NCBI RefSeq assembly: GCF_001194135.2 | Contig: NC_068982.1 | Coordinates: forward strand, 170,581,812-170,645,726 | DNA from: Octopus bimaculoides | Lineage: Eukaryota | DNA: 63,915 nucleotides | Direction of reading: 5' to 3' | Shown: positions 58,450 to 60,813 of the stretch, piece by piece | Numbering within the stretch: the stretch's first letter is position 1 | Layout of the letters: the number at the start of each line of letters is the position of its first letter | The notes under the pieces: generated by a model | Database searches by the model: none | What the model was told of the DNA's origin: nothing | The model's input: only the letters and a program-made list of their open reading frames with translations | Program-made: the position numbers and the translations under genes

Positions 58450-58620
58450 GAGGTACACACTCAAAGACGCGGATATATATAGCAGATAGCCTTGTAAATA
58501 TTCTTTGCATCTATGATATACTTCAGGAGAAGGTAGTATTTCGTACATATTTGGAGGCAGTCACTAACGATATATATGATATCCTCCACGCAGATACAAA
58601 TTTTATATAAATAAAATTTT

Positions 58621-59213
58621 ATATATACACGGCGAATATTGCTGAAACTGACGCATCAGTTTTAAGAATTCTCAACCGGCACTTTTCGGATGATAATGGT
58701 CCCTATTAGTGCATAATGTCTTCCTTCATGTACGTTAACTACAACATTAGAAAGGTTCAGCTCTTATTTCCAGCAATGTATCTGCTTTCTAACATTCTAG
58801 TAACGTGTAGTAGCACTTGTAATTCTCCTTTTTTTTTGTAAACATTACAAATTGGTGTTTATATCAATTTTTTATATACACATTAGCGAGTCGCTAAGTC
58901 ATCCAATAATTTGGATGACAAAAACATAAAAACTAATGGCGAAGTGAGTCCGGAAAGAGTTGAACAAACGAGCGCTCTTAACTGATGAGGCAACGGATAT
59001 TGCTGAAACTGACGTCAGTATTAAGAATTCTCAGTCGGTACTTTTCGGACGATTATGGTCCCTGTTAGTGTATATGTTTTCATTCACGTGCATTAACTAC
59101 AGCATTAGAACGATTTAGCCCTTATTTCTTGCAATGTAGGTGTTTTCTAACACCCTAGTCACATTTAGTGAGAATCACAAATCTCCTTTTTTGGTGAAAC
59201 ATTGCAAACTGGT
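58621..59213 (+). mobile_element. Tandem ~359-bp non-coding HHR-bearing repeat (retrozyme-like, family A), about 1.6 monomers
   Basis: gctgaaactgac recurs at 58641 and 59002, followed by about 200 bp of alignable sequence. Equivalent cleavage positions are after 58661 and after 59020. No ORF. Ends in (TG)n. Confidence 0.75.
58976..59026 (+). ncRNA. Type I hammerhead ribozyme, family A (complete core, loop-less palindromic helix III)
   Basis: tcttaa-CTGATGA-ggcaa cggata ttgct-GAAA-ctgac gtcag-TA|ttaaga. Stem I is 6 bp and perfect, stem II is 5 bp with one G-U, helix III is the palindrome CTGACGTCAG, cleavage triplet GUA (cut after 59020). Confidence 0.9.
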
Positions 59214-59595
59214 GTGTATGTGTGTGTATGTGTGTGTGTGTGTGTGTATGTGTGTGTGTGTGTGTATGTGTGTGTGTGTGTGTGTGCGTGCGGGTGTGTG
59301 TGTATTGTATATGTATGTACTCTATGTGTAAGAACTAAATGCGTATGTTTGTGACGATATTGGTAAGTAGACTTGCTGCCAGGTACCTTAGTTATTAACA
59401 GGGCGTTATAGAACCATTTTATACCGAAGTGACCACACCCAAAAATTCCATTTCTTTGTTATTGATCTACTTAATTCTTCTTCCTTTTTGCGCGCGTGTG
59501 TGTGTATGTACAATTATATGTGTCTTTGTGTTTCTCTGCGTGTATGTATGTGTATGGACCTATGCTTTTGAGTATATGTTTATGTGTGTGTACGT

Positions 59596-60479: not shown

Positions 60480-60620
60480 TAGGTGCAGGTAAGAAGTATG
60501 GTAAGAAGCTTCCATCCCACCCACATAGTACCGAGTTCAGTCCTACTATAGCCTCGAGCCGACCAAAGCCTTGTGAGTGGATTTGGTAGACGGAAACCGA
60601 AAGAAGCATCTCGTATATAT
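60480..60620 (+). mobile_element. SINE family 2 5' part (internally deleted), abutting the family B HHR module at its (TA)n
   Basis: ggtaagaagctt..gagttcagtcctactatagcctcgagccgaccaaagccttgtgagtggatttggtagacggaaac. Confidence 0.75.
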
Positions 60621-60813
60621 ATGTTAGAGGTAATACTTGATAATTGTAAGCACCTGTGTATGCCAGATCGTGGCCGGGGTGAAAGAATAAATTGGAAACG
60701 TAAAAATAAAAACAAAACACAACGGATTCTGCGGTACACGTGTTTCAAGCTTTATAGTTGTTGCATCATTATTGGTATATAATTGATAGTATAAAGCTAT
60801 CTTCAGCCGCAAA
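60621..60813 (-). mobile_element. Family B HHR-bearing Penelope-type terminal module
   Basis: HHR followed on the minus strand by a U-rich tract and ending at (TA)n. About 165 bp are shared with 14419-14582. Confidence 0.55.
60728..60813 (-). ncRNA. Type I hammerhead ribozyme motif, family B
   Basis: Minus strand reads tttgcgg-CTGAAGA-t agctttata...tataaagct t-GAAA-cacgtg-TA|ccgcaga. Stem I is 7 bp, stem II is 9 bp, helix III is the palindrome CACGTG, triplet GUA; the first stem II position is U/U. Confidence 0.75.

What the first reader, a model, noticed from the sequence alone, without database searches (positions are those of the whole stretch)
58621..59213. Retrozyme-like tandem repeat: ~359-nt non-coding monomer with an obligate-dimer type I hammerhead
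Seen: a complete HHR (58976-59026) whose helix III is a loop-less palindrome (CTGAC/GTCAG), repeated with about 360-bp period in ORF-free sequence. The monomer carries further hairpins (ttagcga-g-tcgctaa; gtcatccaa-taat-ttggatgac). Established: minimal type I HHRs with palindromic helix III cleave as dimers, and tandem monomers of a few hundred nt with one type I HHR each define metazoan non-LTR retrozymes, which are processed to circRNAs and thought to be mobilised by Penelope-like elements. Inference: this is a cephalopod retrozyme family; a multimeric transcript would release a ~359-nt monomer that could circularise. Novelty in this taxon is unverified.
Basis: partly seen in the sequence, partly recalled or inferred. 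Interest (0 to 1): 0.92.

Follow-up and report, generated by a model that had tools for sequence, protein, structure and literature searches.

The report
Decayed hammerhead-ribozyme retroelement copies in octopus
This is an old, partly duplicated copy of a small non-coding mobile element that carries a self-cutting "hammerhead" RNA motif; such elements (retrozymes) are already known from many invertebrates, including mussels, so this is an ordinary new example, not a new kind of thing.

Summary
The hammerhead ribozyme (HHR) motif at 58976-59026 is real. The full catalytic core is present, helix I has 6 bp, helix II has 5 bp, and the predicted cut falls after 59020. The ~359-nt period is also real.

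The locus is not a tandem array. It holds about 1.6 units (58631-59213) at ~80% identity, with one complete ribozyme plus an upstream 3' half-site.

A second, independent copy lies on the minus strand (28232-27664). It has the same 1.6-unit layout and unrelated flanks, and like the first it is followed by (TG)n. Between the two loci, helix I shows two compensatory changes. The HHR core is 93% identical against ~60-75% for the rest of the unit, so the ribozyme was under selection in the family.

The "loop-less palindromic, obligate-dimer" helix III comes from a 2-nt deletion private to this one copy. The two other family copies have a 5-bp stem with a 4-nt loop.

There is no PLE (Penelope-like element) reading frame in the window. 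Rfam's hammerhead models do not reach threshold. No further copies could be retrieved.

Best reading: these are relic insertions of a retrozyme-like element, probably PLE-mobilised, in an octopod genome. It is a new member of a known kind and of modest interest.

The parts
58594..58630 (+). Tentative 37-nt fragment matching monomer positions 185-220 (the 3'-terminal or 'tail' segment). It ends in TATATACAC directly upstream of the insertion.
   Evidence: Local alignment against the monomer, p=0.005 from 200 shuffles, but the sequence is AT-rich. A 16-nt direct repeat (D12) links 58615-58630 to 58866-58881.
58631..58661 (+). 5'-truncated HHR 3' half. It contains the helix II 3' strand UUGCU (58639-58643), GAAA, the helix III hairpin ACUGA-CGCA-UCAGU (58647-58660) and U17 (58661). 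It has no CUGAUGA core.
58662..59020 (+). One complete 359-nt unit, running from the predicted cleavage site to the next predicted cleavage site. GC is 35.7%.
   Evidence: MFE -85.2 kcal/mol with z = -2.35; the 5' end pairs with the helix I 5' strand.
58883..58919 (+). Two adjacent hairpins, TTAGCGA-G-TCGCTAA and GTCATCCAA-TAAT-TTGGATGAC. Both are kept at the second locus, with one-sided and two-sided changes.
   Evidence: helices 10 and 11.
58976..59026 (+). The only complete type I hammerhead motif at this locus. The predicted cut is between 59020 and 59021.
   Evidence: The active fold scores -6.6 kcal/mol against -12.3 for an alternative inactive fold.
59021..59213 (+). Partial second unit (193 nt), 79.6% identical to the first. 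It ends at ...AAACTGGTGTGTAT, where it merges into (TG)n.
59214..59300 (+). (TG)n microsatellite directly after the 3' end of the element.
27664..28232 (-). Second, independent copy of the same family, 569 nt and ~1.6 units. It consists of a helix III 3' strand remnant plus cleavage site (28232-28226), a full 345-nt unit (28225-27881) and a partial unit (27880-27664). (TG)n lies on both sides and the flanks are unrelated to those of locus 1.
27875..27927 (-). Complete type I hammerhead of the second locus: UCCUUA-CUGAUGA-GGCAA-CGGAAA-UUGCC-GAAA-CUGA-CUGG-UCAG-U-A|UAGGAA. It has the canonical G10.1-C11.1 pair and a 5-bp helix III with a 4-nt loop.
   Evidence: The best Rfam hammerhead-clan hit is 30.2 bits, E=2.7e-5 in an 86-nt search, below the gathering score.

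Best explanation
The region is an old, neutrally decaying insertion of a small (~350 nt per unit) non-coding retroelement that carries a type I hammerhead ribozyme. It belongs to a retrozyme-like family, probably derived from and mobilised by Penelope-like elements (PLEs), in an octopod genome.

Shown:
- The window holds two independent insertions.
- Each is a partial dimer of ~1.6 units (583 and 569 nt) and contains one complete ribozyme core plus an upstream remnant that still carries a cleavage site.
- Both are followed by (TG)n. One insertion's 3' end and the fragment lying upstream of the other insertion end at the same monomer position (TATACA).

Inferred:
- In active family members, a transcript longer than one unit is cut by the ribozyme at successive sites. 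This gives a ~345-360-nt RNA with 5'-OH and 2',3'-cyclic phosphate ends, which a host tRNA ligase can circularise.
- A PLE reverse transcriptase copies such RNA into nicked microsatellite DNA, starting at a fixed internal site. That would explain the partial-tandem, fixed-3'-end, 5'-truncated copies.
- Even a 1.6-unit transcript could release a unit-length RNA. The single enzyme core could dock either on its own downstream substrate strand or, across the folded unit, on the upstream substrate strand.
- The copy at 58631-59213 is most likely a relic, not a working gene.
For: HHR motif:
- Complete core and three helices at both loci, against 0.05 hits per shuffle.
- Helix I covaries between the loci. 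UUAAGA/UCUUAA becomes UAGGGA/UCCUUA, with 2 double changes, 1 G-U change and 100% pairing.
- Helix II changes from G.U to G-C.
- The HHR core is 38/41 identical between the loci, against 60.5% in the spacer and 75.5% in the body. Fisher p=8e-4.

Family and mobility:
- The two loci are 63-77% identical to each other and have unrelated flanks.
- They share the same 1.6-unit architecture.
- (TG)n follows the 3' end of both.
- Locus 2, and the 37-nt fragment upstream of locus 1, both end at the same TATACA(C).

Fit to the literature:
- Retrozyme units are 150-450 bp, low GC, one type I HHR each, from dimers to multimers, and occur in mussels (PMC7229834).
- Retrozymes appear to be derivatives of the PLE pLTR, the pseudo-LTR formed by partial tandem copies (10.64898/2026.07.22.740005).
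- PLEs form partial tandems and insert preferentially into microsatellites (PMC8557442).
- PLE reverse transcription starts at fixed internal sites, which leaves an optional 30-40 bp tail (PMC11167929).

One core, two sites: constrained folds put the core-on-upstream-substrate conformation level with the cis conformation. The values are -98.2 vs -97.6 kcal/mol at locus 1 and -75.8 vs -77.3 at locus 2.

Age: within-locus repeats differ by 20% (JC ~0.24).
Against: - Only two family loci could be examined, so the end positions, the covariation and the 'tail' all rest on n=2.
- Rfam Hammerhead_1 does not match. Gathering threshold gives 0 hits. At E<=10 there is nothing, or a misaligned 11.8-bit hit.
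- The active HHR fold is not the minimum-energy fold. It scores -6.6 vs -12.3 kcal/mol in isolation, and lies 5-12 kcal/mol above the unconstrained MFE in locus-length transcripts.
- The locus 1 HHR has G10.1.U11.1 and a 2-nt deletion in loop 3.
- No PLE RT/EN remnant is in the window, so a PLE link is not shown here.
- No further copies turned up in 41 kb of Octopus sinensis or 78 kb of unidentified ENA contigs. Pattern scans of the metagenome, viral and prokaryote collections gave none either.
- No target-site duplication is recognisable.
- The second unit's fold is no better than shuffles (z = -0.40).
Confidence: 0.7

Rival explanations
1. The repeats are not an independent retrozyme. They are ORF-less terminal pieces (pLTR-pLTR partial tandems) left by an autonomous Penelope-like element whose pLTR carries this HHR.
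For: PLE pLTRs carry HHRs. PLEs insert as partial tandems with a fixed 3' end or 'tail' and favour microsatellites (PMC8557442, PMC11167929, PMC4209133). Both loci show these features.
Against: tblastn with the Poseidon_Ac protein finds no RT/EN remnant in the 64-kb window. No RT or GIY-YIG motifs appear in stop-free segments. Two independent loci have the same ORF-less layout. Helix sizes (I 6 bp, II 5 bp, III 5 bp) are canonical, unlike the minimal HHRs typical of metazoan PLEs (PMC4209133). The distinction is partly semantic, because a 2026 preprint argues that retrozymes are pLTR derivatives.
Confidence: 0.2
2. It is a fragment of a satellite-type long tandem array with hammerheads, like newt satellite 2, that was truncated or collapsed in a draft assembly.
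For: The window is a draft with 5186 N. HHR-bearing satellites exist (PMC7229834).
Against: Both loci have clean junctions to non-homologous sequence and microsatellites, with no adjacent N runs. The two units per locus differ by 20% and so would not collapse in assembly. The two loci share the same 1.6-unit extent.
Confidence: 0.04
3. The HHR at this locus has been co-opted by the host, for example to process a host transcript, and is maintained by selection in place.
For: The HHR core is better conserved between the loci than the within-locus decay rate predicts (P(<=3/41 differences | p=0.20)=0.024).
Against: The upstream half-site at the same locus has decayed like the body. This copy carries G.U at 10.1-11.1 and a loop deletion. 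No gene context was identified. The excess conservation is equally explained by selection in the source elements before insertion.
Confidence: 0.04
4. The hammerhead-like motif is a chance match in AT-rich repeat DNA.
For: Rfam models do not reach threshold. The active fold is not the MFE.
Against: A 31-nt core pattern occurs twice in the window against 0 in 100 shuffles. The full descriptor gives 0.05 hits per shuffle. Helix I has compensatory changes, and the core is the best-conserved part of a 27%-diverged repeat.
Confidence: 0.01

Closest known systems
Metazoan non-LTR retrozymes (Cervera & de la Pena 2020, PMC7229834), for example the ~350-390-bp Mytilus galloprovincialis repeats
   Same: The unit is ~345-359 nt, non-coding and 36-39% GC. 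It carries one type I HHR with canonical-size helices. Units lie head to tail. The unit is predicted to fold so that its ends pair, which forms helix I. The host is a mollusc.
   Different: There are only ~1.6 units per locus, with one complete ribozyme. The copies are old (20% internal divergence). No expression or circle data exist. No sequence similarity to a published retrozyme could be tested. A literature search for this HHR sequence found nothing relevant.
Penelope-like element pLTRs and their HHRs (PMC4209133, PMC8557442, PMC11167929)
   Same: Partial-tandem insertion architecture, microsatellite at the insertion site, a shared 3' end with a possible short 'tail', and an HHR in the repeated part.
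   Different: There is no RT/GIY-YIG reading frame or remnant. The HHR is not the minimal type: metazoan PLE HHRs have a long helix II, a 4-5 bp helix I, and little or no helix III.
Dimer-dependent type I hammerheads (newt satellite 2, axolotl retrozymes, PLE min-HHRs)
   Same: Helix III is (near-)palindromic in all three family copies. The predicted intermolecular helix III duplexes are strong (-13.5 to -20.8 kcal/mol) and the hairpins are weak (-1.8 to -2.8).
   Different: Those ribozymes have a 1-2 bp helix III. Here the family has 5 bp plus a 4-nt loop, which can close within one molecule. The loop-less version is a private 2-nt deletion.

Membership tests
Hammerhead ribozyme, type I | Conserved catalytic core: C3 U4 G5 A6 N7 G8 A9, G12 A13 A14, A15.1-U16.1, H17 | tested here: met
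   All positions are present at 58982-59020 (+) and 27921-27881 (-).
Hammerhead ribozyme, type I | Helices I (open), II and III (closed) in type I order, supported by covariation | tested here: met
   Helix sizes at the two loci are I 6/6 bp, II 5/5 bp and III 4-6/5 bp. Helix I has 2 compensatory changes and 1 wobble change between the loci, and helix II has a G.U/G-C change. Only two sequences were available.
Hammerhead ribozyme, type I | Match to the curated Rfam model (RF00163 or another hammerhead-clan model) at the gathering score | tested here: not met
   There are 0 hits at gathering threshold. Locus 1 gives 11.8 bits, misaligned, against a gathering score of 34. Locus 2 gives 30.2 bits to Hammerhead_3 against a gathering score of 48.5.
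Hammerhead ribozyme, type I | Active fold is energetically accessible | tested here: inconclusive
   The active fold scores -6.6 kcal/mol against -12.3 for an alternative CUGAUG:CGUCAG pairing. It lies 5.7 kcal/mol above the MFE in the locus transcript. Nearest-neighbour models ignore tertiary contacts.
Hammerhead ribozyme, type I | Self-cleavage at the predicted site | not testable with these tools
   Needs in vitro transcription and a cleavage assay.
Metazoan non-LTR retrozyme | Repeat unit of ~150-450 bp, non-coding, low GC (<45-50%), without LTR/PBS/PPT | tested here: met
   Units are 359 and 345 nt with GC 35.7-39.1%, and the longest stop-free stretch is 56 aa. There is no tRNA-like sequence.
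Metazoan non-LTR retrozyme | Head-to-tail tandem copies (dimer or more), each flanked by complete HHRs | tested here: inconclusive
   Each locus has 1.6 units, one complete HHR, and an upstream substrate-side remnant. This falls short of a full dimer.
Metazoan non-LTR retrozyme | Multi-copy and dispersed in the genome | tested here: inconclusive
   There are two loci with unrelated flanks in 64 kb. None was found in 41 kb of O. sinensis or 78 kb of other fetched loci. No cephalopod genome could be searched by DNA.
Metazoan non-LTR retrozyme | Expressed as unit-length linear and circular RNA | not testable with these tools
   No transcriptome access.
Penelope-like element (autonomous) | ORF with telomerase-like RT and a GIY-YIG endonuclease | tested here: not met
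   tblastn of Poseidon_Ac against the window gives a best E of 6.7. Pfam and motif scans of stop-free segments were negative.
Dimer-obligate minimal type I HHR | Helix III absent or 1-2 bp with a small palindromic loop, so that only a double hammerhead is stable | tested here: not met
   Two of the three family copies have 5 bp plus a 4-nt loop. This copy can form 4 bp plus an ACGU loop. Dimerisation remains possible but is not shown to be required.

The most novel reading that the evidence does not exclude
Octopus genomes may carry a still-active retrozyme family whose transposition-competent unit is a partial dimer, with one ribozyme core and two cleavage sites. The core would cut its own site in cis. 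It would also cut the upstream site in a Haseloff-Gerlach-like arrangement across the folded unit. That would release a ~350-nt RNA that circularises. The shared 3' end next to (TG)n would be the footprint of PLE-type internal initiation of reverse transcription. This would be the first cephalopod retrozyme, and it would give genomic evidence that PLE machinery mobilises retrozymes.
Probability: 0.2. Interest if true: 0.5.

Novelty: new member of a known kind. Interest (0 to 1): 0.3.

Why it matters
If confirmed genome-wide, it would add cephalopods to the animals known to carry hammerhead-bearing retrozymes. I found no open-access paper that links the two. The consistent 1.6-unit copies with a shared 3' end would also bear on how such elements are copied, either by PLE-style internal priming or by rolling-circle reverse transcription. 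As it stands, it is a routine repeat annotation. The kind of element, its ribozyme type and its occurrence in molluscs are all already published.

Tried and rejected
- Rfam at the gathering score on the whole window, and at E<=10 on 1 kb and on 86-nt pieces, gave no valid Hammerhead_1 call.
- I searched for more copies with exact-pattern scans of metagenome contigs (two patterns), viral contigs and prokaryote genomes. They gave nothing, or 3 chance hits that lack GAAA.
- A profile of the spurious reading frames across the HHR, searched against 5.8 billion proteins, gave nothing.
- I sampled 41 kb of Octopus sinensis and 78 kb of ENA contigs through transposase look-ups. They held no family copy and no HHR.
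- An exact look-up of a window ORF was not on record.
- An inverted copy, or a longer upstream copy, next to locus 1 was rejected except for a 37-nt AT-rich match.
- A tRNA-derived SINE was rejected: ARAGORN found no tRNA-like sequence.
- A permuted hammerhead with helix II open scored 7 kcal/mol worse than the cis form. I replaced it with the enzyme-on-upstream-substrate model.
- The third HHR-like motif at 33945-34003 shows no homology to the family outside the motif.
- The mir-297 hit at 59272-59338 lies in (TG)n and is an artefact.

Full report
**1. What is at the coordinates**

- 58976 UCUUAA, the helix I 5' strand.
- CUGAUGA at 58982-58988.
- GGCAA-CGGAUA-UUGCU, helix II, 5 bp, with a G.U pair closing at 10.1-11.1.
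- GAA, then ACUGAC/GUCAGU, which is helix III running from A15.1 = 59008 to U16.1 = 59019.
- A17 at 59020.
- UUAAGA at 59021-59026, the helix I 3' strand.

All invariant core positions are present, and the predicted cut after 59020 is numbered correctly.

A 31-nt degenerate pattern of the core occurs twice in the window and never in 100 dinucleotide shuffles. A full structural descriptor (core plus three helices) finds three sites in the window, against a mean of 0.05 per shuffled window.

The two hairpins lie at 58883-58897 and 58898-58919. The region has no reading frame longer than 56 codons.

**2. The repeat is a partial dimer, not an array**

Alignment and repeat finding give a 358-361-nt period. 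Homology runs only from 58631 to about 59213.
- A 5'-truncated piece (58631-58661) starts inside the helix II loop.
- One full 359-nt unit follows (58662-59020).
- Then come 193 nt of a second unit, which run into a (TG)n microsatellite.

The two bodies are 79.6% identical. The locus therefore has one complete ribozyme. Upstream there is only the 3' half: the helix II 3' strand, GAAA, helix III, the cleavage site and the helix I 3' strand.

**3. A second locus changes the picture**

BLASTN of the unit against the window finds a related locus on the minus strand, 28232-27664. It is 63-77% identical to locus 1.

It has the same layout:
- a remnant of the helix III 3' strand plus the cleavage site;
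- one full 345-nt unit;
- a complete hammerhead at 27927-27875;
- a 217-nt partial unit.

(TG)n lies on both sides. The flanks of the two loci are unrelated except for microsatellites and other repeats. These are therefore independent insertions of a mobile family of ~570-580-nt "1.6-mers".

Locus 2 ends at ...TATACA. At locus 1, a 37-nt stretch immediately upstream of the insertion (58594-58630) aligns to unit positions 185-220 and ends at the same ...TATACAC. This alignment has p=0.005 but is AT-rich and remains tentative.

**4. Evidence that the ribozyme mattered to the family**

Between the two loci, helix I changed from UUAAGA/UCUUAA to UAGGGA/UCCUUA. That is two double (compensatory) changes and one A-U to G-U change, with all six pairs kept. 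Helix II changed G.U to G-C.

The 41-nt core stretch is 92.7% identical. The spacer is 60.5% identical and the body 75.5%; Fisher p=8e-4.

A long-range pairing of the unit's 5' part with the region upstream of the ribozyme also shows two double changes. That structure was predicted from these same two sequences, so it is weak evidence.

The predicted fold of unit 1 is somewhat better than shuffles (z = -2.35). The fold of unit 2 is not (z = -0.40).

**5. The "obligate dimer" claim**

The three helix III versions in the family are:
- ACUGA-CGCA-UCAGU, the locus 1 upstream half;
- ACUGA-CUGG-UCAGU, locus 2;
- ACUGAC--GUCAGU, the complete HHR of locus 1.

By comparison with the other two, the loop-less palindrome is a 2-nt deletion private to this one decayed copy. 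The family state is a 5-bp stem with a 4-nt loop.

That is larger than the 1-2 bp helix III which makes newt, axolotl and PLE hammerheads dimer-dependent (PMC4209133, PMC7229834). Cervera and de la Pena also report that most invertebrate retrozyme HHRs cleave efficiently on their own.

Even so, all three versions are near-palindromic. The predicted hairpins are weak (-1.8 to -2.8 kcal/mol) and the intermolecular duplexes are strong (-13.5 to -20.8). An inactive alternative pairing, CUGAUG:CGUCAG, beats the active fold in isolation (-12.3 vs -6.6).

Dimer-assisted cleavage is therefore possible. "Obligate" is not supported, and the question cannot be settled by computation.

**6. Can this locus release a unit-length RNA?**

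With one catalytic core, simple double self-cleavage is not available. However, each locus keeps two substrate strands (helix III 3' strand, cleavage site, helix I 3' strand). The single enzyme part (helix I 5' strand, CUGAUGA, helix II, GAAA, helix III 5' strand) could in principle bind either one.

Constrained folding puts the two conformations level:
- Locus 1: -98.2 kcal/mol (upstream site) vs -97.6 (own site).
- Locus 2: -75.8 vs -77.3.

Both lie above the unconstrained minimum of -103.3 and -89.7. A variant with helix II open is worse, at -90.5.

This is an inference, not a result. Given ~20% divergence between the two repeats of each locus (JC ~0.24), these particular copies are most likely relics.

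**7. Link to Penelope-like elements**

The literature supplies a fitting mechanism.
- PLEs insert as partial tandems (pLTRs) and prefer microsatellites (PMC8557442).
- Their reverse transcriptase starts at fixed internal RNA sites, leaving a defined 3' end and an optional 30-40-bp "tail" (PMC11167929).

The observed features agree with this: 1.6-mers, (TG)n after the 3' end, ends within ~20-40 nt of each other, and 5' truncation. They come from two copies only.

No PLE coding remnant is present in the window. tblastn with the Poseidon_Ac protein taken from that paper's supplement gave a best E of 6.7. Pfam and motif checks were also negative.

**8. Host and novelty**

A mariner-type transposase remnant in the window has its best hits in Octopus sinensis (75% and 67% identity). 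Two O. sinensis loci share the window's transposons at 83-91% DNA identity. An octopod origin is therefore supported.

I could not search any cephalopod genome by DNA. The 41 kb of O. sinensis and 78 kb of ENA contigs that I could fetch contain no copy and no HHR. Scans of the metagenome, viral and prokaryote collections gave only chance matches.

Full-text searches found no paper that connects retrozymes or hammerheads with cephalopods beyond a passing mention of PLEs, and none that contains this HHR sequence. However, the 2020 survey scanned RefSeq invertebrate genomes and states that such repeats occur in many invertebrate phyla, molluscs included.

**9. Verdict**

The region is a 1.6-unit relic with one complete ribozyme, not a tandem array, and the dimer-only feature is a private mutation.

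The interpretation as a retrozyme-like element is reasonable and is my best explanation (confidence ~0.7). The main rival is the closely related idea that these are ORF-less PLE termini.

It is a new member of a known kind, and its interest is modest.

Noticed in passing
window 33945-34003 (+): A third sequence fits the type I hammerhead descriptor: UUCUA-CUGAUGA-...GCAAUUCUUAUUGC...-GAAA-UCUUGAGAU-A-UAGAA. Its helix II is interrupted by a 4x4 internal loop. Its surroundings show no homology to the family. It could be a relic of another HHR element or a chance match.
   Followed up: partly
window 20906-21763 (+), 22339-22821 (+), 23417-23779 (-), 29187-29453 (+), 25836-25994 (-): Mariner/Mos1-type transposase remnants. 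The first has Pfam HTH_48 and Transposase_1 matches; the others are called from how they read. The best protein hits for the 21359-21763 ORF are 'SETMAR-like' models of Octopus sinensis, and its DNA is 83-88% identical to two O. sinensis loci.
   Followed up: partly
window 60618-60793 vs 14416-14586; window 19642-19947 and 60543-60622 vs L001/L002: Short interspersed repeats unrelated to the HHR family. One is shared within the window at 86% identity. Others recur several times in the Octopus sinensis loci at 80-91%. They look like SINE-type elements.
   Followed up: no
L003 12630-14573 (ENA ERZ22157276, ctg12001l): A 647-aa gene aligns to the Poseidon_Ac Penelope-like element protein (33.6% identity over 497 aa, E=2e-68). 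My descriptor found no hammerhead anywhere in the locus. The organism is unknown.
   Followed up: partly
window 59272-59338 (+): A weak Rfam mir-297 match (24 bits, gathering score 90) lies entirely within the (TG)n microsatellite. It is a low-complexity artefact.
   Followed up: yes
whole window: The assembly is draft quality. There are 5186 N in many gaps, GC is 32.6%, and (AC)n, (TA)n, (AG)n and (TCTA)n microsatellites are very dense (for example (TCTA)56 at 24647-24871).
   Followed up: no
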